DNA of 64,000 bases from Ostrea edulis (GCF_947568905.1 NC_079166.1:48174001-48238000), one strand, 5' to 3'. Shown: positions 750-64,000, counted from the stretch's first letter. Notes: generated by a model not told the origin, from the letters alone. Numbers and translations: made by a program.

Positions 750-1082
750 AGAAAGAGAGAGAGATAGAGAGGAGACACACAGATAGAGAAAGACAGAAAG
801 AAAGAGAGACAGACATAAAGAAAGAGAAACAGAGAGAGAGAGACACACAGAGATAGAGAGGGACACAGAGAAAGACAGGGATAGAGATAGAGAGAGAGAG
901 AGAGAGAGAGACACACACACAGACATAGAGAGACTTAAGAGACATACAGAGACATAGAGAAAGAGAGACACCAAGAGAAAGAGAGACACAGAAAGAAACA
1001 CAGAGAGACTCATAGAGAAAAGTACACATGGGGAGAGAGACAGACAGAGAGAGAGAGAGAGAGCTGAGACAGACAGAGAGTA
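750..1082. repeat. Imperfect (GA)n/(GACA)n microsatellite tract
   Basis: Direct reading of gagagaga/gacaga runs; source of spurious S/L-rich ORFs at 643-1212 and 738-1013. Confidence 0.95.
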
Positions 1083-1197
1083 TCAGAGAAAAATATTTTG
1101 GTGCTAGGAGAGAAAAAAATAGATTGTTTAATTTTGAAATATTTTTATGACGTTGCCAAATGACAAAATAACATTCCATAGTGCCTTGAATTTTAAG

Positions 1198-9735: not shown

Positions 9736-12700
9736 GTTAGAAATCTTCAATATTCTTCTACTAATGGCATTAAATGATGCTATATTTTTTTTATTATGCA
9801 CCTTCAACTTTTTTACAGTGGGGTAATCATATATCGTCGACTGACCAGTTTTCTCATTAATCACTTGGATTAGATAAATAAACAACACGTCTGCCTTTAA
9901 AGTAATTAAATTCCTTTACATTCATCCAAAAATTCCTAATCCATTGGTACGTTAATTGCATATATTTTCGTAACAAAAAACATGTCACTTTGTGGTCTTA
10001 AAACGTTGACATCACCTATTTCGGTGACCATTGTTAATATAGGTTTACCAAAAGTTTGTAACTGTTAAAATGTGTATACAGGAGGAATGTGCAACTAATC
10101 GTCAATGAATAGAATAACATAGTGTAGAATTCTAGACTTTTGGTATACTTTATATGAATTTGAAGGTTTACTTGAAAAAGTAATAAGTAAATGGGCTTAT
10201 TTTTTGGGTGCTAATGTTGATTTTTTGCATACTCTCCTTCAAGTACTTCATTTTCGGAAAAAAATTGAAGAAGTGTTCTGTGTATGTTTGCAAACACTAT
10301 GGCGAAATTGATGACGTAATCAACACCCGGAAATGACAATGCGCACACGTAAACCAAAGGTCACCGATTCTGGTCAGTCACCGAAATAGGGCAGTCGACG
10401 ACACAATGAACTGTTCACTTTGCTATGGAATTTCAGTCTTGGAAAAGTTGATTTGGACTTTGAATTTCAATTTCAGCCCCCTGAAGATTTCAGAGAAGTG
10501 ATGCTGAGAAGTGCCCAAGACAGATCTCGTAAATTGCAGGAAATGGTGAGAACGGTAGCAGACGGCCTACAGAAAGTGGCCAACACCCTGGCACTCAGAA
10601 AGGTGAGGGAAGTTTTTACACTTTTTCTGTTTAGTTTGTGGTAGAATTAGAAAAGTACAGAATTCAATTCAGTGATGCATCTTTTCATTATTGCATATTT
10701 TGTTAAATGATAAAATTCAATTTAGAAAAAGGTATCACACATTCTATACCATGGTGATTCTTGAATTTTTATCAATATATGTAGAACTATAGGAAGACTT
10801 GACTGTGCTTTCATAAGAGCACTGGAGTATGTTTATATTTAGTTTCAATTCCATTCAAACAGCCTTGCATATGTCAGATTTGTGTATTAAATCTTGTCAT
10901 TAATTTAGGTTTGTTACAAATATCAGATTTGTGTATTAATTCTTGTCATTACTTATACAATATAGGTTTGATACAAATACCATATTATGAGCTTCATATT
11001 GTCTTAGTAGGCATAATTGATTTGTAAAATACAGGTAGATTAGAATTATTTGGAATTATAGTATAATAAGGTACTGCATGTTAGTGCAATTTTCTCATAT
11101 GGAAGAGTCTTAAATGAAGTAGAGTGCAAAAAATAAACTTTTTCTCATTTCATTTTCACTGTTCGAACAAAAAATTGACCGGACTAATTTCATTGTCAGT
11201 GTTGTCTGTAACTTCATTCTCTAACTGATCACATGGTGCAATGCGACCCACTTTTCAGGAATATGACCTCACTTCAATGCGGGGAGAAATGCATTCCAAG
11301 CTCATTGGGTACAAGCGGCGCCAAATCGTCAGGGAGCCACAGCGCCGGCCATCCTCTTCACCGTCTCTTATTCCAATGATGGTCACTATTATAAAACACT
11401 GCATGATTAATTGGGCTTATTTATTCCATTATAATTCATTTCAATGCCAGTTTGAAACAATGGGTAATTCTTGCTTTACTCGCTTACCTGTAAATCCAAT
11501 ATTTATCAGGAATCTCACATGCAGGAAACTAATTTTTCTCTGAAATCTACCACTTTTCAGGAATCCAATAAGTTATGTCTCATTTTTTTCCCCATAGCAA
11601 TTTGAAAGATGTAATGATTGTTGATTTCAAGTATTTATTAAAATGATAAATTATGATAAGTAATTGAAAGATTTCAAACTGGCATCACATTACTAACATA
11701 CACCTATATTAGCCTTTGTATCAGATTTTGGAATATTGGTAATTAATTTATGCATAATTGTTTTAGAAATTCAAATTCATTTGCAAGGAAACTAGGATAC
11801 AATGGCAAATAGCAAGTGTCAAATTTGTTTACTGACATCAAAACTTCCTTTCCAGTGTTTATCATTCCAGCACTACACCTCTTCATTAAATAATGGTGAC
11901 GGACCTGGTATTTCTACTGATGACCATTTTTCTCCTTGTATATATTTGTCTTACATGTTTGTTTGACTGTTCTTCATGTCTATTAGGGCTCTTAGAATGG
12001 ACTTTGGTTTCTGAGTACTCGAGTGTATCTGATCGGGTTGTATTGAATGATACACATATTTATATTTCTTTATTTTTATCTTGGCACACTTTCATTTTCA
12101 ATTTTGAAAAGCAATACAGTGTATCATTTTTGAGTTTATAGATTTAATGCATGTTTTTTTTTAGCATTGGATTAAGGTTTAATTTTTAAAAAAATGTTTT
12201 TATCAGTTTGAAAAGTAATTTAAAAAAAAAGAATTATAAAAATTTTGATTTTAGTGAACTTTTACATCTTTAGGTAATTAAGGTATTAAAATTTTGAGTG
12301 GAATTTCAGTGCCCTGAGTATTTCCCAGGCCTTTTAGATATGCTATCTAATTGATCACTTTGTGCCATTGCAGAGTGAGCATCATGGGAAATCTAAGAAG
12401 ATGGCACTTATGATGGATGAAGAGGAAGTGGCACGGGAAAAACAGAAAGCCATGGAAGAAGAGCACCACGTGGCTGAACTCATTGGTGAGGTCAAGGTCA
12501 TAGGGGATGCATGGCCTTTAACTACTAAAAATATTTATTGATAGAAATTTTTTTTTATAGATGCTCATTTACATTTCTCTATTTTGAAATGTATTAAATG
12601 ATGATGTTGAATGCCTGTATTTGGTACAATTTTTCCTGTATGGCTATACCGTAGAGAATCAATCAACCTCACTTCATATTTTTGAACAGCACATTATAAG

Positions 12701-15700
12701 GATGAAGTTTATGATGCTGTATTGAGTGCCACCTACAAGTCCCTGGCAGCACTGGCAGAGTCCACAGGCTGTGAAGGGGAGGTAATCCGTGCCATCAGCT
12801 CACTGTCCAATGCCTCGAGTGACCACCATGGTACACCAAGATCTGCCAGAATGCATTCTGCTCGCAGTCGAATTTCCTCTGCAGTGTCTGAGAAATCCAG
12901 ACCCCAAACGAGCTTGTCGCAGCTTTCTACCATGACTTGGACAACAGAAAAGACAAATGAAGTGACTTATCTTCAGTAAGAATTAACTGTTTTATGTAAA
13001 TAATGCTAATACAAAAATGGAAGTAATTAAATTACACATCAGAATCATAACGTGTTGTAGAATAGTATGGCATTCTCTAAATGTCACATGGAACTTGCAT
13101 ACTGTAAAGCCCAGGCCTTATTTCTCACAGCGCATGGTAAAACTTGATAAATTGAATTTTTCAGTTCACATGTCACGGTCAAAATGGCTATTTGTGCTCT
13201 AATTTACATTTCCTAACATGTACTGTATCATGGTCTTTAACAGTGCACTTTGTCATTCATATATCATGAGATTTCAACCATTAAATTGTATAAAACTGTC
13301 TCAAAAAGGAATGCAAGATCACTCGATAAAGGAAGGATTAGAAAACCCAAATGTTCAACCTTTCTTTAGGACAATGAACAAATTAAATTTTTTTCACTAT
13401 GTGCATGTACTCGAAATGTAGTTTGATGTAACAAATTATTGAATTAATATATGTTGGTTTGAATAGTAAAGCATTTTTTTTTTCTCATATGAAAATAAGT
13501 ATATTTATTCTTCATAAATACTGTGTAATTAGTATTAAATGATGTTTTAGACTCACCATCGATTCCCATGTGATTTCTTATTATACTTTAGCATAAAAAA
13601 TGTAGACACTTTGCGACATGTCCCACAAAAGATTTACTCCAAGACATTTTATTTTCTTTCTTTGATTTTAATTAATATCCATTTGTTAATGCTATTGATA
13701 CATGTATCTCTATGAAAGAATATGAAAACATCTCACATGGACATTTTATGTCATATTCTATCATGATAAACTGGGATTTTTTTTTTACTTTTGACATGCA
13801 CCCAACTTCCATCCCAGAAACCTAGTATTTTCTAATCAAATTAACTATTAAAGGATTGCTTTGTTTTGAAAGTAAATAAGGCTTGCTGTCCTTAAACTGT
13901 GTAATTTAGAAAGATTTATACCGATCTACATGTGCCAACTGATGTATAAACTAGTACATGTTTTGTACTATTGATATTAACAGCTGTGTGCTTTATTTGT
14001 AGATTTGAAGTAGAAGTGGGATTTAACATTCCCAACATCACCCTCAATCCCTCGCTAGATCTGGCCCAGACTGCCATCATAGAGGTCGCTAACGCCATAT
14101 TGGAGGCCACCAGAAGTAATTAAACTACAATCAATCTTAATTAGATATTGATATCATAAATTAGAATTTGATTTATTGTGTGCTGAGGAAAGTTATTTTT
14201 AGCTGGTATGAAAATTCATATTAGGATATAGATGAAGCAATCTGGTAAATGAATGGAGGATGTGCGAAAATCAACAGAAAGGGGCATATTTGTTTGATTA
14301 ATTGGATGAAATGTCAATAATTTTGAATAAGAAAGCACTTTTGTATGTGCCATTGGGTACCTGTAACAAGCACTTTGTATGTGCCATTGGGTACCTGTAA
14401 CAAGCACTTTTGTATGTGCCATTGGGTACCTGTAACAAGCACTTTTGTATGTGCCGTTGGGTACCTGTAACAATTTTTAAAAACATAGATTGAGTTTTTA
14501 TCCCCTCATAATTTATTGTAAGAGGGGATTTAGTACATGTAATGGAACCGTTCGTGTGTGGGTGAGTATGTGTGTAACACTGAGCTTGTAGACCCTCTAC
14601 TGGCCACACTTTTTGCTTGATTACTTTGATACTTTTCATGTAGCTTTCTTATCAAGAGAGGGAAAAACCTGTTGATTTTTGGATCAAAAGGTCAAATGTC
14701 AAGATCACTATGGGACTTAATAGAAAAAGCTTGTAGACACTCATTACGAGGGGATATATCCTGACTTACAGAGCTCTTGTTTAGAAATGATTCTAGGTTT
14801 GCATAAGAATAGAGAGCTCTTGTTTAGAAATGATTCTAGGTTTGCATAAGAATAGAGAGCTCTTGTTTAAAAATGATTCTAGGTTTGCATAAGAATAGAG
14901 AGCTCTTGTTTAGAAATGACTCTAAGTTTGCATAAGAATAGAGAGCTCTTGTTTAGAAATGATTCTAGGTTTGTATAAGAATGCAGAGTTCTTGTTTAGA
15001 AATGATTCTAGGTTTGTATAAGAATGCAGAGCTCTTGTTTAGAAATGATTCTAGGTTTTACTGCCTTCTAATTTGCAGACATTGACTGGTTATCTCTCCA
15101 TGGAACAGAGAATTTCTACAGCTCAATCTCACAGGATGAGAATGTCCAGGAAATGACCAAACAGGTAGCTGATATAGTGCAAGGTAAGGTCATTACATTA
15201 AGTACTTAAAACTTCATTTGTCACCATTTTCTTTAAAGTCAGAAAGTGTCTGAATCCTCATTTTTTTGTGGATTGTGTATATAGTGACTTTTTAGTTCAA
15301 TCTGTGCACTATTGCAGGTTGGCTTAGATTACTGTTGATTCCTAAATATACACGAGAAATTTATTATCGCATAATTTTGCAAGAGGCATCACTCGCAAAA
15401 TGAAATTACTCACTTTTAGTTTTCTGTTGCTGTAATACATATAAGAACTCTTGAATAACAGAAGAAATGGGAATTCATGTGCACACGATTTGACATATAC
15501 GAGTCTTTTCGCTATATTAAGTACTAGCATAAAATGTGGAATCTACTGTATTCTGTTCTTTTCTTCAAATTATTGTTTCAGTTTTAAATATTATGATATG
15601 TTTTTAAGGGGGACTTACCTCTGTTTTTAAAGGTAAATGATGAGTAGAAATGCATGTCTTGCATGTCAAATTAAAACGAGTGCTGACAAATTGAGCACAT

Positions 15701-18700
15701 ACCAACATCTAAGAAACAACTCCCCTTGCATGTGACAGACCCTTCTTTTATATATAGATTGTTTAAATTTCTATCTGAATGGCTATTGTGAAGTGCTTAA
15801 AGCAATGAATTTCAGATTACTTGCAGTACTATATTGAATTTGCATGAATTAAAATGGGAAAAAATTGCCCATGAAGTTTGCCCATTTGACCATGACACCT
15901 CATTGATGACATGAAGTTTGCAGATTTGACAATGACACCTGATTAATGACATGAAGTTTGCAAATTTGACAATGACACCTCATTAATGACATGAAGTTTG
16001 CAGATTTGACCATGACACCTGATTAATGACATGAAGTTTGCAAATTTGACAATGACACCTCATTAATGACATGAAGTTTGCAGATTTGACCATGACACCT
16101 GATTAATGACATGAAGTTTGCAAATTTGACAATGACACCTCATTAATGACATGAAGTTTACAGATTTGACCATGACACCTCATTAATGACATGAAGTTTG
16201 CAGATTTGACAATGACACCTCATTAATGACATGAAGGTTTAGAGTAGTTACTGGGTTTTGCTGTGTGTTTGCTTTTAGGCTTAAACAATGTCCATTAAGA
16301 CAGAAGAGTATAAAGCTTTGTGTGAAATCTTACACTGATGAACTGATGATTTTTATTTTTAAAAAATTCAAATTCAAAATGTGTGTGTGTGTGTGTAAAG
16401 TAACTGAGTTTTTGATATTTCAGAGCTGGAATCCACAGTCAACAAACACCTGTTCCACTTCAGTTATTATAACTTCCTGTGGAAAGATGATCTCCATGGT
16501 AACTTTAAGGAGTTTATCCTTGCTGAGCCTGGCATGTTTAACATTAAGAAGGAGGTGGAACGCTTCCTGTACATAGAGAAGAAAGTCCTCGGCATCCCCA
16601 AAGTGCTGCCTGTTGGTTGTATATGTCTAAGGACAGACCCCATTAAGGATGCTCTGCATGGATTTGCCATGGCTTGGAAGATTCAGTTTGCGTCAGTATT
16701 ACATGAAGAAGCCAAGGTAATTTCCTCTTTCACCAAAAAAGAAAATCTCAGAATGGCTATTATGTTTAGTTTCCTCAAAGTCATATGATAAATCTTAAGT
16801 TATAACTGTTCAAACTTTAGTTGTCCATAGAAACTTTATCAACCACTGAGAGAGTTACATGTAGTTGAAAGAAGATTGAAAGAAAATGTTATGATCAAGA
16901 GTTAATGCCCTTGGCAGATTAAAATGACTCCCTTAACATTAATAAAGTGTTCATATCCGTTCTCACACAGAAAAAGTTGGATTCAGCCGTGTTGTACAGA
17001 CTGAATGTCCGTAACAGACTAGAGCTACACGTCCAGTCTCTGGATCAGCTGAACAGTGCCCTACAGCTACTGGAGGAACTCAGAGACATGGAGAACAAGG
17101 TAGACAGCATCTACCTGCCCATAGAGACCATGTATGAGAAGCTAAGGTAAGACCCAGGTGTCAGGTGAATGTTTGTCACATGACCTTATCAAGAATGATA
17201 CATTTATGTCTAGTAACAGTACAGATGAAGCTTATTAATTTCTCAGTCATTTGGAAGATGAAATATCTTTTTTTAGTTAATTCCTTGGGTGTTTTGATGT
17301 ACAATTTCTTATTTCAAAATGAATGGGACTTAAGATAGATTTTGAATGAATAGATATGTACTTTTACAGGGAGTTTGAGCTTCGTTTGCCAAGGAATGAA
17401 GTAGAGGAAGTAGATCAGCTCCGTGACAAATGGTTAGAGCTGATGGATCTAGCGGAACAAGTAAGGGAAAATCTCCTGAAGGAACGGCGAGGAGCTTTCG
17501 AACAAGAGCTGGACAAAAATGTAAAAGCTTTCGTGGTAGAGGTGATGGAATTTAGAAATGCTTTTGATTCTCAAGGACCAAACGCCCCCAATACTGCGCC
17601 AGCAAAGGCAGTGGCTAGTTTGCAAGAGTTTCAGCAAAAGTACAAATTGTATGACTCTAAACGGAACACACTTGTGTCTGTATCAAAGCTGTTTGGCATT
17701 GTGTGTAAACCATTCCCTGAACTGGATAAAACTGGTGAAGAACTAGATCTGCTCAGTCAATTGTATGGACTGTTCCAAAAGTTTATCCGGTTTGATACCA
17801 GATTTAAAGACACCCTGTGGGCAGATGTAGATCTTGACGCTGCATTCATTGAGGTATGCATAAAATAAAAAAGAAGCAAAAACCTCCTCAAAACTCATAT
17901 ATATTAATCATGATTATAGGAAGTCTTAGCCAGAGCAAAATTGATACTTCAACAATGTATTACTGATGCAATCCTTTGATGACCCACACTGCTTACTCTT
18001 TAGGTGGAAGGTTACTGGGATGAGTGCCTAGCTCTGCCAAGTAAACTCAAGGACTGGGATGCTTACCATGATCTTAAAACCTCACTACAAAACTACCTAG
18101 AAGTGTTCCCCCTGCTCCGAAAACTCAACTCCAAGGTAATGTAGCAATCCGATTAAATGGATGATAAACCACATCGGGATCATTGCACTGCAACTTCCTG
18201 CTCTATTCCACTCCCGCCATTTATTATTTTTATATCTGTTTGCAGCTTCTTCTTTTTCTCATTGAGGGAAGGAATATTTAAAAAAGACTCTTTAATGAAT
18301 TATAGTATAATTGCATACAGTCACATGTCTTATTATAGTAAACATGTAATTGCATATAGTCACGTGCCATTATAACTGCATACTGTCGCATGCTCTAAGT
18401 ATAACTACAGACTGTCAGGTGCTATAAGTATAACTACAGACTGTCAGGTGCTATAAGTATAACTGCATACTGTCGCATGCTCTAAGTATAACTACAGACT
18501 GTCAGGTGCTATAAGTATAACTACAGACTGTCAGGTGCTCTAAGTATAACTACAGACTGTCAGGTGCTATAAGTATAACTACAGACTGTCAGGTGCTATA
18601 AGTATAACTACAGACTGTCAGGTGCTATAAGTATAACTACAGACTGTCAGGTGCTATAAGTATAACTACAGACTGTCAGGTGTTGATGACAATATTCACC

Positions 18701-21700
18701 AGCATGTATAGTATCTTTGCAATTAAATGAATAAAACCTTAGCTTCATTATTTATAAATTTAATTCAGTTTACTACTATATATTTGTATATTTAGTTTCA
18801 TAGTGACCTAGATTCATACTTGAATAATATTTCTGCAAAACTAATAATTCCTGTAATATATTTCACGTCAGTCTTTTCTATGTATTTTGCTGATGAGTAT
18901 TTTAAGCTTACATCCCCTTCATTAATTTTTCTCTCCATCCCTTGTTTACTTCTACATTGCTTACATATCCAGGGAAGTATTAAGTACCATATACCAGTAA
19001 GTAATGACCTTACCTGTCTGTCTGCCTGTCTGTAAATAACATCAGATGCTCAATGTTTCCTTGCCAAATTTTCATTCTCTTAGATTTTGAAGACAAAATT
19101 CCTGCATTTAAATAATAAAAAATTCAAAACAACATCTTATAAATATCATAAGAAAAATTCAAATTTTTAGTGACAAATGAAGTGTATAAAACTAGCAGGA
19201 AAATTGGGCATGCATTTATGCATATTTTACTTAGCATCCTTTTAGTTTGTAAAATGAAAATTTTACATGTAGCTAATAAGAGGGCTTAAATTAACATGGA
19301 GATTGGACTTTTTGATTAAATAGATGTACTTGTGCATGTGTCGAAATTTTTACCCGTATGTCGATCATGTCAGTTGTCTTGATCTAAAACTTGTTCTGAA
19401 ACCTTGGTGTGGGATTGAATATAATCTTAATTTTTTTTTTCCATTTTGTCATTGACTTACATAGTTCTCTGAGTATTTTTAGCAACATTTTAGATTAGGC
19501 TATTAGAATTTTAGCAATTAATTCACAAATCTTAATTCTATTCTTCATTTCATGTAAGTTTTCTTTTTTGATAGATGATGTAGTGAGTTATAATTAAGGA
19601 ACCCCTTTTGAATATGACTGTGTTCTTGTAATGGCAATGTTTTTTCATGCATCATGTTTTCTTCAGGAAATCCGAAACCGCCACTGGCTAGATGTGATGA
19701 ATGTGACTGGAGTAAAATTCCAGCTGGAGGCCAATGTCTTCAAATTGTCACACCTACTGGACATAGGACTAATCAAGTTAGTACAAAGTGTAACACCTAC
19801 TGGATATAGGACTAATCAAGATAGTACAAAATCCACTTACTGGACTAGTTAGTACTATTATAGTATACTGGGTCAAACTTTGGATGTCCGTCTTATTAGC
19901 CCAGTGCATTCTGATAAATGCAACTTGCCGCTTCAGAATTTAAGACTTTGGGTTCAAATAGCAATTCCACAACTTATTGATTTTTATACCCCCCGCAACA
20001 AGTTGTGGGGGGGTATACTGGAATCAGGTTGTCCGTCCGTCCGTCTGTAGACGCAATGGTTTCCGGGCTCTAAAGCATTATCCTTTCCACCTACCGTCAC
20101 CATATCATATATATGGACTACCCATGGGATGAAGATGTTCCCTATCGATTTTGGGGTCCAAAGGTCAAGCGCACTGGACATTGAAGTAGCAATATGGTTT
20201 CCGGGCTCTAAAGCGTTATCCTTTCCACCTACAGTCACCATATCATACATATGGACTACCCATGGGATGAAGATGTTCCCTATCGATTTTGAGGTCAAAA
20301 GGTCAAAGGTCAAGTGCACTGGACATTGAAGTAGCAATATGGTTTCCGGGCTCTAAAGCGTTATCCTTTCCACCTACAGTCACCATATCATACATATGGA
20401 CTACCCATGGGATGAAGATGTTCCCTATTGATTTTGGGGTCAAAAGGTCAAAGGTCATTCGCACATCGAAGTAGCAATATGGTTTCCATTTAAATTCTTT
20501 AATGGCTTTTTTCATCGCATGGAGATGCTGTGTTCCTAGATACCTTTTGGATCATAATACTGAAGTTTTACCTATTACCAACACCCTTTGGGAGATTGGG
20601 GTAAGCGGGGGGTATTCTTAGTGAGCATTGCTCACAGTACCTCTTGTTTCAAATAATATAGCAGAAAAACAAGTTGCTATGGAAGTTACATGTATTTGAA
20701 AAGTTGAAGCAGTTCAATGTTTACAATATGGAATGCTTTTCATAAGATATGGAGAGAAAAAAACTATACCTCAGCTAAACTGCATGGGAATTACATCTTG
20801 TGAATTTATGTTTTCAGACACAAGTCTGACATAGAAGAAATCTGTATGAGTGCAAGCAGAGAACTCGAACTTGAGATCAAACAGCGAGTCACGGAAGATG
20901 AATGGAATGAGCAAATGCTGACCTTTGAGCATTACAAGAACCGTGGCCCCATGTTCCTAGACAAGGTCTCCACAGAACGCCTGTTGGAACAGCTGGAGGA
21001 TGCTCAGGCTCTTCTGGCCAGCATGCTGACCTCCAAGTATATCGCCCCACTCCGGGATGATACTGCCCTCTGGGCGAAGAAGCTAAAGGATGTTACAGAG
21101 GTTCTGGAGTTGTGGCTGCAGGTTCAGGACCTGTGGCAGTACCTAGAGGCAGTGTTCAGTAACTCTGTAACCGCCAAAGAACTTCAGCTGGAGGCAAAGA
21201 GGTTTGCCAGGACTGACAAGAGCTGGACCAAAATGATGAAGACCACTTACTTTGAGATGAGAGGAGTTTTGCAGGTAAAAAGCTGGTCAACATCAAACTT
21301 AAGACATGATACATATAGAGGTGTACTTAGAATGAAATAGGTCAAGTATTCTAAATTTTCTGTTTTGTCTCTGCAGTGCTGTACCGGTGATGAGGTGCCA
21401 AAGGTGAACCTTCTTCGTAACATGCAGCAGGAGTTGGAGATCTGCTTTAAATCTCTGATGGAGTACCTGGATAACAAGAGACGGGCCTTCCCACGATTCT
21501 ACTTTGTGTCTGACCCTGTCCTACTGGCCATGCTCAGCCGACCTAATGACCTTGAGTCTGTCAGACCACACCTCAAGTAAGTTTTCAAGGTCATGGTAAC
21601 AGAGATTTTATCATAACAACTTCATATTCCTTATTTGCTTCATTAAATTTGTAGCTGAGACAGAATATGATGAAATGTGATTATTACACATTCATTCATT

Positions 21701-48700: not shown

Positions 48701-51700
48701 CGGTTTGCTGAGTGGGTGTGCCATTAACTGGATGTGTGATTGGCCTCAGGAAGCCTTACTGGGAGAAGCTTCCTACTTCATCACCCGCTACCAACTCACC
48801 GAGGAGTTTGAAAATCTCAGGTTCATATTTATCAAGTGGTATACATTATGAGCATAATAGATATCAAACCCTTGTTAGTTCTTGGGTGAACTGCAAACTG
48901 AAGACAAATTTGTTGCATTGCGAATAATTGGGTAGGAAGATTTTCCTGGTTTTATTTTAAAAAAAAAAGAAGAAGACATTCATGGTCATTTTTCAAGGTT
49001 TATCATTCTTTACTCATGATATTCACATACTTTCATGTAGGATTTGAAGTTATTGATGTGTGAAAACCACAAATCAAGATAGAGTTTAGGCTATCATGAA
49101 AATTAGTGATTTCAATGCATTTCATGTTTTTTGCACAGTGAAAAAGTGACATCATGCTTGGCCAACATTCACAGCTTTGTCCTGAGGGACTGTGCCCAAT
49201 TACCATGGGCAGGTGACCTCAGTGAGGATATAAACATTAATCAGGTCAAGGTCGAGAAAAAGAAGGACCAACAGATTGTCAAATTCCTCCCAGCCAAGGT
49301 CCCCAATCTGCCTTATTCCAAGGTCATCCTGCAAGAGAAGATCAAGTGAGTTTATTTAAATATCTTGACAACTGATATGAAATTAATGAAATTTCCTATT
49401 TGTATTAAGTACATGTGACTGATTATTGCAAACATTATGAATTGAATAAATTCATGTACCGTATATACTCGCCTATAAGTCGGTCTGCCTATAGGTCGGT
49501 TGTATTTTTTAAGGTTATTTTGTAGGAATTTGCCATTGACCCGCTTATAAGTCGGTACAAATTTTTGTCGGAATCAGTTGACAATTTCAAGTCAATGCTC
49601 TAGTGTTTTTACCTATGTTTCAAAAAATATTTTGAGAAATTAATAATTATGAGGTGCTCAATATCCAAGCCATATCTATTTGGGGTTTAAACACAACCCT
49701 TGATCTATTATGGACAATGATCCCTTGTTTACCTAAGCCATTATGGTCTCCTAATTACCAGTACTTGACACTGTGTTTACTAAGTGGCACGTGCCTTTCG
49801 AAAACTGTTATTGTGGGATTCTGGTATAATTCATTGTATCAACAAGAGAGTTTTTAAGAGTCAAGAATGATGATCTAAATTATCTGTTAACAATATTCAA
49901 TCTTTTATGAAATATATTTCAGCTGGTATACATATGAATATTTCAATATTAAATCGGGTTTGTAATTCAATTTTACCGATAAACGATAGATTACCGGTAT
50001 GTAAATAATTTTTAACTAGATAAAAAATATGTGAATACTTGTACTTTATACATAATTTTAAAATTCATAAACAATACAATATGTCTAGATATTTGTGAAC
50101 AATAATAATTTGTGTGGTAGTCCATGATAATCGTCGGAGTTGTTGAAAAAACACTACATTACGCCGCCCAGAAAAATACCAATCTTCTTAGGACGCACCT
50201 ATAAGTCGGATATAGAGTTTTGGACCAAAAATTGACTCCCAAAAATCCGACTTGTAGGCGAGTATATACGGTATATAATATATATATATATATATATAAT
50301 CACATTGCTTTGACTTGAACCTGACTTATAGGCGAGTATATACGGTACACATTTGTGTTGTTGTATTGTGAACTTGATTTCTATTTGCAGACTTCAGCAC
50401 AGATCAGATGACATGAAAGCCAAAAATGAGACATATGTTGGACCCACAACGTACAGGAGATTTATGGAAACATTCAAGTTCCTGTACAACACAAAATGTC
50501 AGGAGAGAACGGAAACCGTGGACCAACTCAAGTCAGTTCTGCCACTGTTGTCTCACTTCCTGTGTTCCTGTCAGATTATTTGAACATCTTCAGAAATTTA
50601 AGAAGATAGGTTTTTTTTTAAGAAGAAAAAAAACATAATGGATAAATCATGCTAAGATCAATAAGTAAAAAATAATATCAATGGTTATGTAAGAGTGAAT
50701 TAAAGGTAATCAAAATTATATGTTTGACGTATCTCCCAATCAACTTAGAAATGATGAAGTTGATTATAGTAAGAAACCATGACTTTGTAAAGTGCAGCTG
50801 TGTGCATGGTTTTCTTTGTCCTGCAGACGAGTGCTTCATACCTTGGATCAAACACGTCACGATGTCAAGATCATGAAGAAGGCCATCAAAACCATCACCA
50901 CCAAATTTGAAGATGCCAAAAAGACAACCAGCAATCTGATGAAACAGTTGACCACCAAAGCCACGGCTCTGGAGAAACTGAAGTCCCGAGTGACGGTTGG
51001 CACAGACCTCGAGGCCCACATGAAGCTGTACATGACAGAGAGCGAGGATGAGGAGGAGGAGGAGCTTCTTCTACAGGAGGAGTACGATGATTACGATAAG
51101 GAGTTTGACAAGATGAGGGAGGCGAAGCTAAAGAACCGACAAGCTGTGGCCAAGGAGGAGCTCATTCAGGCTCAGAAACACGTGGAGGAGTGTCGGCAGA
51201 ACTTGGAGTACGCCAGACAGCAGGTGAGGGGTCAATGATACAGGGAGGTATCTACAAATTAAGCCTATACAGGGAGGGTATTGCTCCAGTTCTGTTTTGT
51301 TCTAATTTTGCTGTTCTTTTTGGTCCTCATTTTCTTTTGAGAAATTTTGTAAAGGATGTATGTATTGATTAAACAAGTCAAAATGGGGAGATCAGAAATT
51401 GGTTGATATAGTATTTCAGTACATCAGAGCAGAAATAACTGTAGATGAACATTTTCCAGAGGACAGTGTATTATGATTTCTGTAATTACATGTGTAATGT
51501 TTGTGCTCCGTTTACCATCATCTGGATGGCTTGATCAGGAATCAAAAAGAAAATACTTCATTTGCTTTATTTTGTGGTTGATGAATTGGATGTTCTTTTT
51601 CAATACTTGTAGAGAATATTTTGTGTTCTAGGTTATAATCTGGAAGGCCAAAGTAGACAGGCCTAGTATTGAGAGGCTGAAAGGATTTGGTAATCCACCA

Positions 51701-54700
51701 AATTTGGTCGGACAGGTGATGGAGATGGTAATGATACTGATTGGAAAACGTCTTCCATCGCAGCGGCTGTACGAGACCAGGGAACTGACCGGCAAGGAGG
51801 AAATGTCCAGTCGCATGTCCTCTAGTTCCAGCAGCACCAGGATTGGAGTGAAGAAAGGTGGGTGGATAGAAAAATAATCTTTGATTAATAAATTTAGATG
51901 TGTTTTACAAGTTGAATTTCATTTGAGGAAATGCTAAATTAAGTCAATTTGGTGAAAATGTTTATGATCAGAAGCAGTTTTTACACTCACTTTCTATTTG
52001 TTTTTTTCTTTGAATTTAAACTTTAGGTGTGTATGCATGGAGACGTGAATACCAATTTTACTACTTTTTGTTTGTGACCTGATTTTTGTGTTAATTTAGA
52101 TAACCAGTTTGGATATGGTATGAGCAATATCAAAGTTTCAATATTCTATTTATAGCTTTATATCTACACCTATTTTGCTAAGGTTCATCTTTATCCATTA
52201 CATTATTTTGCATTTCCATTTTCACACCCATATCATATAAAAAGATATATGTGCGAGCTTTTTTCAGTAAAGATTTGATGTATACCACATACATTTTTAA
52301 ACTACCTTTTATTAGTGCAATACACGAACATTTATGTGTATCTGATACTTACACTAGCATAAGAATGGGGGGATAGCATATAACTGATCAGTCAGCTGTA
52401 GTATTTACAAACATTAAAACAATACTTATTTTGTGATATTTACACAGAATAAAACAGAAAGTGATACATGTATTTTATAAATATGTACATTGTAAACATG
52501 ATAGAATTTGACTAAAAATGGTAAATTTTATTTTGATTTGACAGTAGAAAGGACAATGCTAATTAATTCAAAATAGCACTCATTGCTAGTTCCAATAGCA
52601 TTTACAAGAGTAAGAATGAAACAAGATTATAATTCAGAATTACTCAGCAAACTTTGATAGCATTCAAATTCTACAAGCATTGATATCATTCAAATTCAAC
52701 AAGCATTGCTAGCATTCAAAATTCAACAAGCATTGCTAGCATTCAAAATTCAACAAGCATCGCTAGCATTCAAAATCTGCAAGTAAAGCATTAAGAAAAC
52801 TAGCATTAATGCCATAACAAAATTAGGTCCCTGTACTGTGTTCATTTTTTTTTTTTTTTAATTTATCATACTTTCATTTCAATGCTAGAACACCTTATAT
52901 GACAAGTTCAAATTTTGTAATTTAAAGGTTTAGTTTGCCAGAAATATGATAAGCAAATTGCTGTGAATGAATGCGATAATGTACATGCATTTTCAAAGAT
53001 TTAAGACTATAGCTGCAGATAATATGTCTGTCCCGGTATTTTGAATTCGCCAGAGAGCTAGAGATCTGCAGCTATAAGATTTAGCATTTATGTCATTATT
53101 CTGAAGGGGCCATTAGCTTCCAAAGTTATATTTGCTGATTGTTACCAAAAGGACGAAAACAACTTTACAGTATATAAAAATCACTGCTGACATATTAAAA
53201 TTCATACATGGTCTTTTGATGTAACTTTGACCTTTGAATTTGTTATGTTTATATAGAAATAATGGCCGAAATATTATTGTATGAAAGTAAAGTACATAAT
53301 TCATTGCAGAAAAATTTTACGTAATTTTCATATAATTTTATTGGGGGTCACTTTATTTACTGTCAGATTTATTTTTCTTTATTTTATTCAATGCATTCCA
53401 GCATTTTAAACAGAAATTCAGAATTTAAAAGTTTTCACCTTCAAATTGAAAGCTAATGCTCCTATAAGGTTTAAAAGGTATATAATTGACTCAATACTTT
53501 TCAATGAATATTTGTATGACTTATGAATACAAAGGTGTAGATTGTACATGTTTTTCATGCCTGGGCACTGGTTGATGGGCTGCTATTATACATTTTTATT
53601 GATCACATTTCCTCCCAACTTTCACCTTGGTAATTGGTTGACATGTTTTGTCCGGGAACTGGGTCATTGTGTTCTCATTTCTCTACAGACCGAAAGAAAT
53701 CTGCACGTAGTTCCGCAGGAAATGCCCCACAAGGTATCATGGGTAACCGCTAGCTAAGAATGAAGTAGAGATATTCTTTGAATGTTCTGCTCTATTTATC
53801 TTTTTGTGTTTTGATGTTTTGACAGGCTATTCATAATTATTTAATGCTACTACATCTAATATGTTAAACATATATGTTTTGTAAAGAGTTAAACTTACAT
53901 TGATATAAGTGTGTCTGTATGTAGTCTACATTGCATAATAGTAAATATGAATTTTTCAAACAACTTTTGCACTCTTATTTTTACCAGGAGAAATCAAGTG
54001 CAAGTTGCCACACACAGTTTTGCTGTAACTCCCCCTTTGTTTTAGCAGAAAGTGCAATTTCTTTTTCTTGTTTTTGATCTCTACTGTAACAGACAGAAAT
54101 AAAATTAAATTAAGTTCATGGCTGAACCAACTTTGTTTAAAGTTTTCATCATAAAAAGAAAAGTCCAAGATCAGTGATCAAAATATTTTATGAAATATTA
54201 AAGAATAAACCAGAAACTGTACACAAAATTCCAATGTAGGATTGAGTCTTACTGCATGGCTTTATGATGGTCCTGTTGAAAAGGTCCATTCAAATTGCCT
54301 ATATCTCTTCCTATTTGACACAGAGGAAAAGAAACTGAAAAGATCCATTCAAATTGACCATATATCTGAAGTCCTTTCTTATACAGAGGAATGGAAAAAA
54401 GCAATACCTGTTACACTGTTATTCTGAGTGTGTTTGTTAGATTGGTGACAGATACATGTAAACTGTTTATGTGATCAGTTTTGTGTTGGTGAAAGGTATA
54501 TTCATTTGTGTGTGCTGTGTGAGTATTGTATTTTCAAAACTTTTGAAGGTAGTACACATTTATGTATACATTGTGGTAGTATAATTATGTATGAGATATG
54601 AAAATGAACTAGCAAAGATAAAATGCAGTACAATATCAAAAGATAACAGTTAGCTCTTTAAGTGATATTATAAAACTGATACATTAGGCTGAACCAATAT

Positions 54701-57700
54701 GAGAGCTGTTGAATAATATCAATGTTTGGAACTGCATTAAAATTTATCACACTTACATTTATGTATATATCAACTGAACAACCAGTTCAGAAAAAACATT
54801 TTACATGTATTAATTATCAAGTGAGAAAGGTTTTTTTTTTCTCACAGGCAAATGAAGGTTGATTCAGTCTCAGGTTTTGGATTAAATTGTCAAGATATAC
54901 AAATATTTCACAATGAAATAAAACTATATTTATGGAAAATGATATTTAAATTTCATCGTTTTTAATTTTCACAGGTAAGAAGGATGGAAGTGACAAGTTT
55001 GATCGCGCTCAGTGGAAGTCCATGCAGCAGACAATGAATGATGCCACCAAGTTCGTGGACATGTTGCACAATGTATCATGGGAAGATGGCTTGTCTGAGG
55101 ATGTCCTTCGGGGTAAAATATCGTATTATATAGTTTTTACTTTAATGGGGTTCATTTTGGTTCTTAGAGAACTGTATCTCGAAAAATTCAACTGAGGTTT
55201 GTTATTTATTGTAATAATTATTCAATTCAAATCTTTACCTAGCTGTTGAAAGTTACCTGGCTGTTTCCAGAGAAGGTCAACTAGGTGTTACAGGGGAAGG
55301 AACTCTGTTGGACAATGCTCTAGGTATAAAGCTTAATTAACAGCTTAATTACAAAAACATATATAGAATTAAAAGGAAACAGATACTTAATTGAAAAATT
55401 AAACTATGATTTGTATTTTGATCTCTAAATGTTTTGTCAAATGACTGTTTTATAAATGACTTTTTGATGTGAAGTCTTGGGACTGTATTGAAATTTACTC
55501 TGTCAACATGAATTCACAAGTGATTCACTCTGAGAGTATTACCTGATAACTTGAATAGCCTTTAGGATAAAAGCACATGTTAATGAAAAAATTATCTTCC
55601 CTCAGATACAACATTTGCTGCCAAGAAAAGAACACCATCCCCTGATGCCACAAAGGGAATTACGATTGCCAATGCTAAATATAGCAGTGAAGACTGTGCC
55701 ACACTCGTGCAGTACACTATTGCCATTGTGGAGTACACCCGCCTCTGTGGTCCACTCAAGGCATCCCTCGAGAAGCTTCATGAGCTGGAACGAGAGATCG
55801 AAGAAAATGAACGTCTGCAGAGAGAGAGTCAAGAGGAGGTGGGACTAAATACAGTCATATACATTGAATTTCCTGATACATATACTCGTAATTCCCTTCA
55901 TATTAATTACAGTAATTGTGTGAAATAAAAATTGAAATTGCACTGAAAATTCAATCAAACAGAAACATTTGACAATTCAAAAATGGTTACGTCTGTATAC
56001 ATTAATTATGAGCTATGGGAAAACTCTTCATATATAGTAAATGGACAATGATTTTTTTTTTTTTTTTTCATTAGTTGCTTCAACAGATCTTTTGAAGATG
56101 TTAGGAAAAAAAGATTAAATGTAAATTTTGATAATTTGAATTGCTAGAAGTAATTTTGTGACTGATATGATATTTGATAGAGGAATTCCCCCTTTCCACA
56201 CAGAAGAAGGGTAATTCTATATGCTTCAAAATGATAGATATTCAGCTGTTTGGTTTTATTTTCTTTGATTTTTATTTAATGAAATTTGAAACAGAGGTTT
56301 AGGTACATGTATTTAACATCTAAAATTAACAACAAAACAGTATTAACCTGGTGGCTGGTGAGTTTAAAAAATAAAAAAAATAATGATTAAGGAAAATTTT
56401 ATGTAAACTAGAAATATTCTGACATTTTATTATATGTAGAAATAAATTTCTATATTTTCTATCTTAGAAAATAATAATTATCCTAGTTCTTTAAAAAGAA
56501 ATTTCTGAATAAATTCCTGTTGATATCATCCAAAAATATATTCAAAATACCTTGTTCAATAAAAATTTAATTTTCTATAAAATTCTTGTAGCAAGAATTT
56601 TTCTTTTTCTTTCACATAAAATTTTGTTCACACTACTTCTTTCAACCCACAACATTTTTTCAACAAACATTATTAAATAGTGATGGTAAGATTTTGGTTT
56701 TCAGCCCCATTTTACACGAGATATTAAGTAACGTAATGTGATTTGTGTACTCTGTAATTTTTCCGAAATAACAGCGTCTTCGGAGGTCAAAACTGACGCC
56801 GTCTCCTAAACCTCAACCAAAGGTTTGTGGGCATGTTGACTCCTAATGTAACAATCTGTTGTAGCTTTGTAACTTTGTCTTATGTTACTAAAGAAATTGA
56901 GTCAAATTTAGCATGTCTCAGTTTTTATGTATTCATAGGTACATCACATTTCAATTCACAATCCTGTCGCAAATTTTCTTTAATTTTTTTTATTTTTGGT
57001 TTTATACTGCAAAGAAAAGATGGGAGCACATTGTGTTTGGCATCTCTGTCTGTCTGACCACAACTTTGACAATGGTCATAATATTGAGACTCTCGGTATG
57101 ATCAAATAATTTGTTGTGTCTTATAAGTCCCTTTGAAAAATTTTCACTCAAAGTGAGATGTCTTGTGGTCAAATAAAAGGACAAAGTTTGAAGTCATGTA
57201 AAGGTCACTGTGATTATGACAAACTCAAATTTTAACTTTTGTCCAAACCTTTAATCTATACAAGATTTATTTAAGTAAGAAAGTCAATGTCAAACTTTGT
57301 TCGATCAAATTTGATGTCAGGTCAACTTGTTGCAGTCGAACTGGTCAATGTCTATTGTGAATTCTTAAAAAATCCTGTGTATTACAAATGAAGACAATTT
57401 ATATAATTATGACATTCTGTATTCCTGTTATGTCAAGGTCCCAAATATCAAGTAAATTAAAAACATGTTATATGTAAATATTGCCAATCTGCTAATTCAA
57501 GAGCTGAAACTGAATTGTGTAATTGTAGCCTAAAATATGATGGGTTGTTTTTTTAGCTTTTAAATTGGGGGGTGGGGGGGGGGGGGGGGGGTAGCTTGCC
57601 TAATCTGAAAACCACAATGAGCTTTTCTGATTGAAGTTGTCTGTAAAATTTTCAATTTCTCTCAAGAACAACTTTGTTATTTCATTCAGACTAGGCTATA

Positions 57701-63766: not shown

Positions 63767-63772
63767 GTAAGT

Positions 63773-63775
<3 letters not shown>

Positions 63776-63815
<40 letters not shown>
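63776..63815. repeat. (TA)n microsatellite just after exon 68 donor
   Basis: Direct reading. Confidence 0.9.
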
Positions 63816-63818
<3 letters not shown>

Positions 63819-64000
63819 TTCTGACCCTAGAAGTGCAACTTCTTTCTTTGTCACTTTAGTCCAGGATGTGAATGCAAAAGATTTCATAAGTCACAAGATA
63901 TATAAAATGTCTCCTTGTGAGGAATTTTTCAAAGGCAAAATCTCTTCAAACAAATATTGTAAAGTCACCAATTCAATTCTTCATACAACACGGCCAGGTG

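What the first reader, a model, noticed from the sequence alone, without database searches (positions are those of the whole stretch)
11259..56822. Hidden modular splicing system: about 17 frame-preserving cassette exons clustered in the long introns of a dynein heavy chain
Seven long introns each hide small AG/GT-flanked open segments with length divisible by 3 and phase equal to the host intron. Phase 0: 11259-11381; 22810-22851, 23318-23353, 23439-23510, 23697-23771; 38345-38350, 38745-38771, 39455-39484, 39937-39999; 56775-56822. Phase 1: 26764-26835, 27410-27448; 32636-32695, 32996-33022, 33932-34009, 34404-34430; 53689-53733. The core exons join without them, so they would be optional. 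Independent inclusion would give very many isoforms differing in the linker, AAA1, AAA2, MTBD and stalk. Dynein heavy chains are not known to me for such combinatorial splicing. Caveat: I selected candidates by these criteria, so some may be chance.
Basis: partly seen in the sequence, partly recalled or inferred. Interest (0 to 1): 0.85.

Follow-up and report, generated by a model that had tools for sequence, protein, structure and literature searches.

The report
Optional mini-exons in oyster DNAHX dynein
The flat-oyster gene for DNAHX, a recently described giant non-motile dynein, builds many of its floppy surface insertions from small in-frame exons; in related molluscs, echinoderms and an acorn worm the gene models include or skip such exons at the same sites, which no paper I found has described.

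Summary
All 17 segments have the stated properties: AG/GT flanks, length divisible by 3, open in phase. Those criteria alone are worthless. The seven host introns hold 957 such segments, as many as wrong-phase, reverse-strand and simulated controls.

Independent evidence still supports 12 of the 17 as real exons:
- Five are exons of the only Ostrea edulis RefSeq model (XP_056013991.1).
- Six are clear homologues of exons in Magallana, Crassostrea or Saccostrea protein isoforms. One of these (23439-23510) is also joined to exon 22228 in an RNA contig.
- One (27410-27448) is a frame-preserving conserved island in a Saccostrea cucullata intron.

Five have no support: 22810, 23318, 32636, 34404 and 38345. 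Four further cassettes were missed: 6697, 18973, 52100 and 56181.

The gene is the oyster orthologue of DNAHX (Chai et al. 2025). The cassettes lie at DNAHX-specific insertion sites. RefSeq isoforms of 14 species vary within species at the same recurrent sites.

So a modular cassette system is real. Skipping within O. edulis, independent combination and function are not shown.

The scan had first-reader notes on subsets of this window (s1-302103, s1-301995) and no follow-up.

The parts
1..64000 (+). Part of Ostrea edulis LOC125674124 (XP_056013991.1 = P0298, 5413 aa), residues about 234-4289. It is the oyster orthologue of the DNAHX dynein heavy chain.
   Evidence: tblastn and exact exon mapping of P0298 on the window. 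It is 49% identical over its full length to sea-urchin DNAHX XP_041462850 (P0185), against 27-30% on partial alignments to canonical DNAH5/8. Pfam domain map.
11259..11381 (+). Exon A, 123 nt, phase 0, in the tail after DHC_N1. Real. Present in all oyster isoforms seen.
   Evidence: RefSeq exon. Best match of the M. gigas peptide scores 146. Present in all 11 oyster proteins. Part of it is variable only in Mercenaria and Gigantopelta isoforms.
22810..22851 (+). Candidate, 42 nt, peptide TPVPGRRQSQSLDE. Unsupported.
   Evidence: No counterpart in any oyster isoform. Skipped in the one RNA contig that crosses it (junction 22228->23439). Splice score ranks 14/957. Carries an RRxS motif.
23318..23353 (+). 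Candidate, 36 nt, peptide IPEICKYIEEMG. Unsupported, probably chance.
   Evidence: No homologue. Skipped in the RNA contig. Splice score ranks 11/957. Its composition is unlike the confirmed cassettes.
23439..23510 (+). Cassette B1, 72 nt, phase 0, between the linker and AAA1. Real, and not in the O. edulis RefSeq model.
   Evidence: An RNA contig of run X2 joins 22228 to 23439 with GT..AG. Homologous to the M. gigas and S. echinata block, scores 67 and 71. The block is absent from M. gigas X27 and C. virginica X2.
23697..23771 (+). Cassette B2, 75 nt, phase 0. Real, and not in the O. edulis RefSeq model.
   Evidence: tblastn hit of C. angulata X10. Score 77 to the M. gigas block QEKEALKKRLRSKISGLRGANCSQF; near-identical to the corresponding S. 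echinata block (alignment). Skipped together with B1 in M. gigas X27.
26764..26835 (+). Cassette C1, 72 nt, phase 1, just before AAA1. Real.
   Evidence: RefSeq exon. The RNA contig joins 26450->26764 and 26835->30392. Skipped in S. echinata X5, and partly variable in Mya. 124 nt of downstream intron is conserved in S. cucullata.
27410..27448 (+). Cassette C2, 39 nt, phase 1. Probably real. Not annotated in any isoform seen.
   Evidence: It lies in one of only two conserved islands in the 3.9 kb host intron when compared with S. cucullata. Both species have 39 nt and keep AG and GT, with indels only outside the exon. The peptides are SPGKQNSRMSLS and SSGKQNTRLSLS. Of 7 nucleotide changes, none is at a second codon position. 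It is skipped in the RNA contig.
32636..32695 (+). Candidate, 60 nt, phase 1. Unsupported.
   Evidence: No homologue. The S. echinata peptide at this site does not match it, scoring 15, which is background. Splice score ranks 55/957. Carries RRQS.
32996..33022 (+). Cassette D2, 27 nt, phase 1, between the AAA1 large and small subdomains. Real, and not in the O. edulis RefSeq model.
   Evidence: VQQYFASLN matches VQQYFASFN of Crassostrea with score 45 against 18 for the next segment. Absent from M. gigas X10.
33932..34009 (+). Cassette D3, 78 nt, phase 1. Real.
   Evidence: RefSeq exon. Absent from C. angulata X1, X8 and X10.
34404..34430 (+). Candidate, 27 nt. Unsupported, probably chance.
   Evidence: No homologue. 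Weak splice sites, rank 143/957.
38345..38350 (+). Candidate 6-nt micro-exon (Glu-Gln) at the AAA2 large/lid junction. Unproven but plausible.
   Evidence: Best splice score of all 957 segments. No oyster isoform shows it. At the same site Haliotis has a 2-residue insert (NQ), and Mizuhopecten X1 differs from Argopecten by a leading EK.
38745..38771 (+). Cassette E2, 27 nt, phase 0. Real.
   Evidence: RefSeq exon. Present in C. angulata. Absent from all five M. gigas isoforms seen (X4/10/14/19 carry E3 instead), C. virginica X2 and S. echinata X5.
39455..39484 (+). Cassette E3, 30 nt, phase 0. Real, and not in the O. edulis RefSeq model.
   Evidence: DELAHQLLIT matches EEMAHQLLVS of M. gigas X4, X10, X14 and X19, score 38.
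39937..39999 (+). Cassette E4, 63 nt, phase 0, ending ..TVEG. Real, and not in the O. edulis RefSeq model.
   Evidence: tblastn hit. Score 77 to C. angulata YQRKPETDTYEPEPIKTVEG. A cassette ending in TVEG is optional in Mytilus, Mizuhopecten, Mya and Mercenaria.
53689..53733 (+). Cassette F2, 45 nt, phase 1, in the Ser-rich insertion of the microtubule-binding domain. Real, and not in the O. edulis RefSeq model.
   Evidence: DRKKSARSSAGNAPQ scores 74 against the Crassostrea block. Splice score ranks 2/957.
56775..56822 (+). Cassette G1, 48 nt, phase 0, in the returning stalk helix. Real.
   Evidence: RefSeq exon. Absent from M. gigas X19 and X27, C. angulata X10 and C. virginica X2.
6697..6723 (+).
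   Evidence: RefSeq exon. Skipped in C. angulata X8 and S. echinata X5.
18973..18996 (+). Not in the O. edulis RefSeq model.
   Evidence: cag|...|gtaagt flanks. GSVKYHIP is present in Crassostrea and absent in S. echinata X5. An 8-11 residue optional block sits at the same site in six other mollusc isoform sets.
52100..52117 (+).
   Evidence: RefSeq exon. Present in M. gigas, absent in C. angulata and C. virginica.
56181..56210 (+). Not in the O. edulis RefSeq model.
   Evidence: Score 39 against 19 background to C. angulata RASPFPRRKR. tag|...|gtaatt flanks.

Best explanation
The window holds most of the flat-oyster DNAHX gene. DNAHX is a roughly 5,400-residue offshoot of the outer-arm DNAH5/8 dynein heavy chains, reported in sea urchin to be non-motile and studded with disordered insertions.

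In this gene at least 16 small internal exons of 18-123 nt sit in introns of matching phase, and all have lengths divisible by 3. They encode Ser/Pro/Arg/Lys-rich loop segments. Where this could be mapped, those segments fall at insertion sites that canonical DNAH5/8 lack.

Because each exon is symmetrical, the spliceosome can include or skip it without disturbing the fold. Gene models of other oysters use different subsets. At the AAA2 site, for example, the subsets are none, E2, E3, or E2+E4.

Shown here:
- the exons exist;
- they are conserved among oysters;
- other species' RefSeq models differ by them;
- one cassette missing from the O. edulis model is spliced into RNA.

Inferred, not shown:
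- the choices are regulated, for instance sperm versus gill or larval cilia;
- they tune loop length, charge and possible basophilic-kinase sites on the linker/AAA1 junction, the AAA1 and AAA2 hinges, the microtubule-binding domain and the stalk.
For: Gene identity: and the paper read.

Exon reality:
- 5 are RefSeq exons of O. edulis.
- 6 are best and well-separated matches of optional blocks in other oysters' proteins.
- Junction 22228->23439 is seen in an RNA contig.

Optionality:
- The five M. gigas isoforms seen differ at the N-terminal cassette, B1+B2, D2, E3 and G1.
- C. angulata differs at 6697 and G.
- S. echinata X5 lacks 6697, 18973 and C1.

Recurrence: within-species variable blocks fall at the same sites in 14 of 15 species sets. 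The counts are G in 11, aa 5040 in 11, F in 9, E in 8 and B in 7.

Insertion sites: at least 5 cassettes coincide exactly with segments absent from canonical DNAH5/8, namely aa 226-237, 719-730, 2227-2252, 2867-2875 and 4701-4712. Others lie inside such segments.

Regulation hint: intron conservation with S. cucullata runs 124 and 48 nt beyond cassettes C1 and C2, against 4-15 nt beyond neighbouring constitutive exons.

Composition: Ser 11.6%, Pro 9.7%, Arg and Lys 8.7% each, and no Cys or Trp.
Against: - Most of the evidence for skipping comes from automated RefSeq models whose underlying reads I could not see.
- O. edulis has a single annotated isoform. For this species I have only one low-depth RNA contig set, from a run coded as another organism label and about 98% identical.
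- Exon A is constitutive in oysters.
- Five candidates have no support, and two of them (22810, 23318) are skipped in the one contig that crosses them.
- No tissue data, no long reads and no protein-level evidence.
- The kinase-site idea rests on 2 RRx[ST] motifs.
Confidence: 0.8

Rival explanations
1. The five unsupported candidates (22810-22851, 23318-23353, 32636-32695, 34404-34430, 38345-38350) are chance pseudo-exons that passed the reader's filter.
For: 957 segments meet the filter by chance. None of the five has a homologue in 11 oyster proteins. 22810 and 23318 are skipped in the RNA contig. 23318 and 34404 differ from the confirmed cassettes in composition or splice strength.
Against: Four of them rank in the top 55 of 957 by splice score, and 38345 ranks first. 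Two-residue inserts occur at the same site in Haliotis and Mizuhopecten. 22810 and 32636 both encode RRQS, a motif type found in the whole 5413-residue protein only inside cassettes. Only 15 of 110 cluster members could be inspected.
Confidence: 0.6
2. The exons are real, but the isoform diversity is splicing noise or annotation inflation. Frame-preserving exons in disordered loops would be skipped at low level without consequence, and Gnomon would turn each rare junction into a model.
For: All skipping evidence is model-based. The cassettes encode low-complexity loops whose sequence and length drift fast between orders. [quoted passage not shown]
Against: The same few sites out of roughly 90 introns are variable in molluscs, echinoderms and a hemichordate. 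Cassette peptides are well conserved among oyster genera. Flanking intron conservation is longer at cassettes than at constitutive exons. Different oyster species' main models use different subsets at site E.
Confidence: 0.15
3. All of roughly 17 cassettes are chosen independently, giving thousands of functionally distinct dynein isoforms.
For: Many sites, all frame-neutral. At least 25-27 numbered isoforms per species in Magallana, Mya and Mercenaria.
Against: B1 and B2 always travel together in the isoforms seen. Several cassettes are constitutive in oysters. Isoform lists built from short reads do not show combinations on one molecule. No data on independence.
Confidence: 0.1

Closest known systems
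DNAHX dynein heavy chain subfamily (Chai, Suchenski Loustaunau, Zheng, Yang, Zhang 2025, bioRxiv 10.1101/2025.01.18.633724; type sequence XP_041462850 of Lytechinus variegatus)
   Same: Same gene family. The oyster protein is 49% identical over its full length to the type sequence, is over 5,000 residues long, and has many disordered insertions in the tail, motor, stalk and microtubule-binding domain.
   Different: The paper treats the insertions as fixed features of one protein and never mentions splicing, exons or isoforms of DNAHX. Here many of the insertions, or parts of them, are separate optional exons.
RefSeq (Gnomon) isoform sets of the orthologous genes, e.g. Magallana gigas XP_065927403-XP_065927427, Crassostrea angulata LOC128183562, Mya arenaria LOC128236579, Mercenaria mercenaria XP_0533973xx
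   Same: These models already contain the homologues of 11 of the 12 supported candidates (all but 27410-27448), and they show them included or skipped.
   Different: They are automated and unpublished as a finding. The O. edulis gene has a single model that lacks 9 of the 16 cassettes. 27410-27448 is in none of the models seen.
Loop-insert cassette exons of myosin II heavy chains (non-muscle myosin IIB/IIC B1 and B2 inserts, smooth-muscle SM-B 7-residue insert). From my own knowledge, not checked here.
   Same: Small in-frame optional exons that lengthen surface loops of a motor domain and change its kinetics or regulation.
   Different: Those have one or two sites per gene and demonstrated kinetic effects. 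Here there are ten or more sites, in a dynein believed to be non-motile, and no functional data.
Alternative splicing of cytoplasmic dynein intermediate chains (DYNC1I1/2). From my own knowledge, not checked here.
   Same: The well-known case of splice isoforms within dynein complexes. It affects disordered, phosphorylated N-terminal regions.
   Different: It concerns an accessory chain, not the heavy chain or motor domain.

Membership tests
DNAHX heavy-chain subfamily | Closest relative is XP_041462850 and its orthologues, not DNAH5/8 | tested here: met
   49% identity over 5,497 aligned columns to P0185 (= XP_041462850.1), against 27-30% on partial alignments to mollusc, fish and bird DNAH5/8.
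DNAHX heavy-chain subfamily | Unusual length (over 5,000 residues) caused by many insertions along the whole chain | tested here: met
   5413 residues. 32 segments of 8 or more residues have no counterpart in four canonical DNAH5/8 sequences.
DNAHX heavy-chain subfamily | Insertions in the stalk coiled coil and in the microtubule-binding domain (before helix 3, in helix 5) | tested here: inconclusive
   Insertions at aa 3770-3845, 3894-3922, 3970-4004 and 4048-4100. The Pfam MT profile matches only weakly. Assignment to individual helices is my inference from sequence motifs, not a structural alignment.
DNAHX heavy-chain subfamily | Poorly conserved AAA1 catalytic motifs | tested here: inconclusive
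   Walker A reads GPVGVGKT and Walker B reads CFDEVQ, against canonical GPAGTGKT and CFDEFNR. GKT and DE are kept. Sensor and arginine-finger residues were not examined.
DNAHX heavy-chain subfamily | Non-motile, locked pre-powerstroke, forms the dynein-X heterodimer | not testable with these tools
   Needs biochemistry or cryo-EM.
Cassette-exon (exon-skipping) alternative splicing | Internal exon with its own AG acceptor and GT donor, and the reading frame kept with or without it | tested here: met
   All 16 supported cassettes have lengths divisible by 3.
Cassette-exon (exon-skipping) alternative splicing | Products with and without the exon in one species (other oysters and bivalves) | tested here: met
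   By RefSeq models only. M. gigas varies at the N-terminal cassette, B1+B2, D2, E3 and G1. C. angulata varies at 6697 and G. Mercenaria, Mya, Mytilus and the scallops vary at the same sites.
Cassette-exon (exon-skipping) alternative splicing | Products with and without the exon in Ostrea edulis itself | tested here: inconclusive
   Only B1 has any evidence. It is included in an RNA contig and skipped in the single RefSeq model. I could not see the reads behind that model.
Cassette-exon (exon-skipping) alternative splicing | Extended conservation of flanking intron, usual for regulated exons | tested here: met
   Conservation runs 124 nt beyond C1 and 48 nt beyond C2, against 4-15 nt beyond five neighbouring constitutive exons, O. 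edulis versus S. cucullata. Only this one region could be compared.
SRRM3/4 (eMIC)-dependent neural micro-exons | UGC motif just upstream of the acceptor | tested here: not met
   TGC in positions -20..-3 occurs at 5 of 16 cassettes against 20 of 67 constitutive acceptors, so there is no enrichment. It is present at 38345.
SRRM3/4 (eMIC)-dependent neural micro-exons | Neural-specific inclusion | not testable with these tools
   No tissue-resolved reads were available.
Mutually exclusive tandem-duplicated exons (Dscam or Mhc type) | Alternatives are similar in sequence and length, and exactly one is used | tested here: not met
   E2, E3 and E4 are unrelated peptides of 9, 10 and 21 residues. 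C. angulata uses E2+E4 together, and some isoforms use none.

The most novel reading that the evidence does not exclude
DNAHX carries an ancient, bilaterian-wide splicing programme. About ten fixed sites are toggled by small cassette exons. Among them are the insertion before helix 3 of the microtubule-binding domain and an insertion in the returning stalk helix, which are among the kinds of insertion (stalk coiled coil, MTBD) that Chai et al. propose disrupt microtubule binding. Different cilia or sperm stages would then get DNAHX variants with different microtubule binding, autoinhibition or phospho-regulation.
Probability: 0.2. Interest if true: 0.8.

Novelty: new member of a known kind. 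Interest (0 to 1): 0.55.

Why it matters
DNAHX was recognised only in 2025, and its insertions are the proposed reason it is a non-motile dynein. If many of those insertions are optional exons used at the same sites from oysters to sea stars, the protein is a family of variants rather than one molecule. The structural conclusions drawn from one sea-urchin sperm isoform may then not hold for other tissues or species.

The result gives dynein researchers concrete junctions to test. It gives annotators seven unannotated exons in the flat-oyster gene. It also shows that a careful reading of raw introns recovered 12 of the 14 cassettes now known in those seven introns.

Tried and rejected
- An exact-match depth-first spliced aligner wandered into absurd 1-5 nt exons, because the window differs from the RefSeq protein at a few residues. 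I replaced it with anchor-based junction solving.
- The genome-contig scan was wasted. That collection holds only bacteria and archaea.
It had no record for shorter isoforms or partial models. As a result only one foreign oyster region (S. cucullata, window 24.7-30.7 kb) could be compared at DNA level.
- The third protein search, for oyster fragments spanning sites D and E, found none.
- Runs X7 and X8, which I expected to be RNA, gave intronic pieces without junctions and look like DNA. Run X1 gave nothing.
- The S. echinata peptide at site D is not a homologue of 32636-32695.
- The eMIC-type UGC motif is not enriched at the cassettes.
- The PKA-type motif idea is thin. Both RRx[ST] motifs of the 5413-residue protein lie in cassettes A and D3, but that is only two motifs, so it remains a hint.
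- Splice-site score alone does not separate real from unsupported candidates. Several confirmed cassettes have weak sites, ranking 65-144.

Full report
**What is in the window.** The + strand carries about 70 exons of one very large gene. Long open segments hit outer-arm dynein heavy chains in the PDB only moderately. A search of protein representatives, followed by two homology searches, led to a family of 5,200-5,500-residue 'DNAH5-like' proteins found from placozoans and cnidarians to amphibians.

The 90% cluster of the oyster member contains XP_056013991.1, 'uncharacterized protein LOC125674124 [Ostrea edulis]' (P0298, 5413 aa). This protein maps onto the window with near-perfect identity, covering residues about 234-4289. 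I solved every junction between anchors and obtained the exact exon table.

A literature search turned up Chai et al. 2025 (PMC11785096), who define DNAHX from sea-urchin XP_041462850. [quoted passage not shown] That accession is my P0185. P0298 is 49% identical to it over the full length, against 27-30% on partial alignments to canonical DNAH5/8. The window therefore holds the flat-oyster DNAHX gene.

**The observation.** All 17 segments are as described: AG before, GT after, length divisible by 3, open in the stated phase. The phases of the host introns are right.

The criteria have no discriminating power. The seven host introns contain 957 segments of 6-150 nt that meet them. The controls give 1027 and 995 in the wrong phases, 1002 on the reverse strand, and 816 +/- 51 in simulated introns.

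The particular picks are a different matter. With splice-site matrices trained on 68 other junctions of this gene, they all fall in the top 144 of 957, and 10 fall in the top 14.

**Independent tests of the 17.**

*(i) The species' own RefSeq model.* These five are exons of the only annotated isoform.
- 11259-11381
- 26764-26835
- 33932-34009
- 38745-38771
- 56775-56822

*(ii) Other oysters' proteins.* I aligned P0298 with five Magallana gigas isoforms, three Crassostrea angulata isoforms, one C. virginica isoform and one Saccostrea echinata isoform. I then scored each foreign block against all 957 in-phase segments.

| Candidate | Score of best match |
|---|---|
| 23439-23510 | 67-71 |
| 23697-23771 | 77 |
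| 32996-33022 | 45, against 18 for the next segment |
| 39455-39484 | 38 |
| 39937-39999 | 77 |
| 53689-53733 | 74 |

*(iii) RNA.* Only 6 kb could be laid once. Contigs of run X2 are coded as another organism label and are about 98% identical to the window. They join 21576->22033, 22228->23439, 25567->26339, 26450->26764 and 26835->30392. Cassette 23439-23510, which the RefSeq model lacks, is therefore spliced into RNA. Candidates 22810, 23318 and 27410 are skipped in these contigs.

*(iv) Genomic conservation.* The only foreign oyster DNA I could fetch was a 12 kb S. cucullata contig that covers window 24.7-30.7 kb. Inside the 3.9 kb host intron it aligns at just two islands: 26730-26959, around 26764-26835, and 27404-27496, around 27410-27448. 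The second island keeps a 39-nt exon with AG and GT. Indels occur only outside the exon, and the seven substitutions fall at first or third codon positions, none at second.

The tally is 12 supported and 5 without support (22810, 23318, 32636, 34404, 38345).

For the 6-nt candidate 38345-38350 there is only a hint. It has the best splice score of all 957 segments. At the same protein site Haliotis has a two-residue insert, and Mizuhopecten X1 differs from Argopecten by a leading two residues.

- 6697-6723 (27 nt). Annotated, and skipped in C. angulata X8.
- 18973-18996 (24 nt). Unannotated in O. edulis, with homologues in Crassostrea and other molluscs.
- 52100-52117 (18 nt). Annotated.
- 56181-56210 (30 nt). 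Unannotated, and matches a C. angulata block.

**Are they optional?** By gene models of other species, yes for most.
- The five M. gigas isoforms seen differ by an N-terminal 12-residue block, B1+B2 together, D2, E3 and G1.
- C. angulata isoforms differ at 6697 and G.
- S. echinata X5 lacks 6697, 18973 and C1.
- At the AAA2 site, oysters show four states: none; E2 (O. edulis model); E3 (M. gigas); and E2+E4 (C. angulata).

Exon A (11259-11381) is present in every oyster protein seen.

I cannot see the reads behind these models, and isoform lists do not tell which choices co-occur. The claim of independent combination therefore stays open.

**Where they lie.** From the Pfam coordinates and an alignment with canonical DNAH5/8, several cassettes coincide exactly with DNAHX-specific insertions (aa 226-237, 719-730, 2227-2252, 2867-2875, 4701-4712). 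Others lie inside larger insertions, including sites B, D, F and G.

| Site | Location |
|---|---|
| 18973 | linker |
| B and C | between the linker and AAA1 |
| D | between the two halves of the AAA1 profile |
| E | between the AAA2 core and its lid |
| F | in the Ser-rich insertion after helix 1 of the microtubule-binding domain |
| G | in the returning stalk helix |

The helix-level placement of F and G is my inference from sequence motifs. The cassette peptides are rich in Ser, Pro, Arg and Lys and contain no Cys or Trp. This fits the disordered insertions reported for the sea-urchin protein.

**Beyond oysters.** RefSeq lists many isoforms of this gene in other animals. I aligned each species' isoforms together with P0298 and tabulated the blocks that vary within a species. 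They fall again and again at the same places:

| Site | Species sets (of 15) with a variable block |
|---|---|
| G | 11 |
| aa 5040 | 11 |
| F | 9 |
| E | 8 |
| B | 7 |
| 1706 | 6 |
| 4701 | 6 |

The list includes bivalves, gastropods, sea stars, a sea cucumber, a sea urchin and an acorn worm. An extra site at aa 2474 is confined to deuterostomes. At site B the flanking residues are almost invariant across molluscs, while the inserted cassettes differ completely between orders. Mercenaria even uses alternative sets there.

**Mechanism and rivals.** The best reading is ordinary exon skipping applied at many sites. Symmetrical small exons add or remove pieces of surface loops at the positions where DNAHX differs from working dyneins. 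Regulation is suggested by two things:
- Intron conservation is longer next to cassettes C1 and C2 than next to constitutive exons.
- The variable sites recur across phyla.

The main rival is that skipping is harmless noise turned into models by the annotation pipeline. I give that 0.15.

What the variants do is inference. Both RRx[ST] motifs of the whole protein lie in cassettes. Axonemal heavy chains are known to be phosphorylated in loop regions (Sakato-Antoku et al. 2025). This remains only a hint.

The cassettes do not fit two other known kinds of alternative exon:
- eMIC-type micro-exons: the defining UGC motif is not enriched.
- Mutually exclusive duplicated exons: the alternatives are unrelated in sequence, and more than one or none can be used.

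**Known or new.** The DNAHX paper contains no mention of splicing, exons or isoforms of DNAHX, and it is the only paper holding the name. Searches for alternative splicing of axonemal heavy chains found nothing relevant. The information exists implicitly in automated RefSeq models of sister species. I class it as a new member of a known kind.

**Limits.**
- One 6 kb RNA lay with low-depth contigs.
- One foreign genomic region.
- 15 of 110 oyster cluster members inspected.
- No tissue information.

Noticed in passing
window 27803-29696: A 53-nt minisatellite of about 36 copies at 97% match fills half of the 3.6 kb intron after cassette C1. It explains the strong negative GC skew at 28-30 kb.
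   Followed up: partly
window 60487-61449: A 31-nt tandem repeat of about 31 copies lies inside the 5.4 kb intron after cassette G1. It produces long spurious ORFs in all three + frames. The gene's introns hold many other minisatellites as well (4635-5017, 14770-15058, 15870-16236, 18371-18682, 20056-20487).
   Followed up: partly
window 46822-47288: A 37-nt tandem repeat of about 12 copies ends at the acceptor of exon 47267-47453. Each unit contains a ..TTTACAG acceptor-like motif. This is the 'array of 12 acceptors' of note s1-301996.
   Followed up: no
L003 6364-7100 (Saccostrea cucullata): The last ~53 nt of the exon orthologous to window 24741-24875, together with ~13 nt of the following intron including its donor site, is repeated about ten times in tandem (period ~66 nt) in the Saccostrea intron. 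It forms a string of decoy donor sites.
   Followed up: no
window 36186-36946, both strands: A purine-rich simple-sequence block in intron 36101-36887 gives long Gly/Arg/Glu/Lys ORFs on + and Pro/Ser/Leu ORFs on -. It is not coding.
   Followed up: no
P0298 aa 226-237, just upstream of or at the window start: A 12-residue N-terminal block (RTVVFPDEPPTY) is skipped in M. gigas X14 and S. echinata X5, and an optional block sits at this position in Mytilus, Mercenaria and Mya (homologous by sequence in the latter two). I could not place it in the window as one open segment.
   Followed up: partly
P0298 aa 4701-4712 and 5040-5046 (downstream of the window): Two more recurrent optional sites, variable in 6 and 11 of 15 species sets. 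They lie at the AAA5/AAA6 boundary and between the AAA6 lid and the C-terminal domain.
   Followed up: partly
Isoform sets of Asterias, Apostichopus, S. purpuratus, Ptychodera (Oedu aa ~2474): A 29-34 residue optional block inside AAA1 is found only in the deuterostome DNAHX isoform sets. By its sequence (..MKNMISVLLHAVG..) it looks structured rather than disordered.
   Followed up: no
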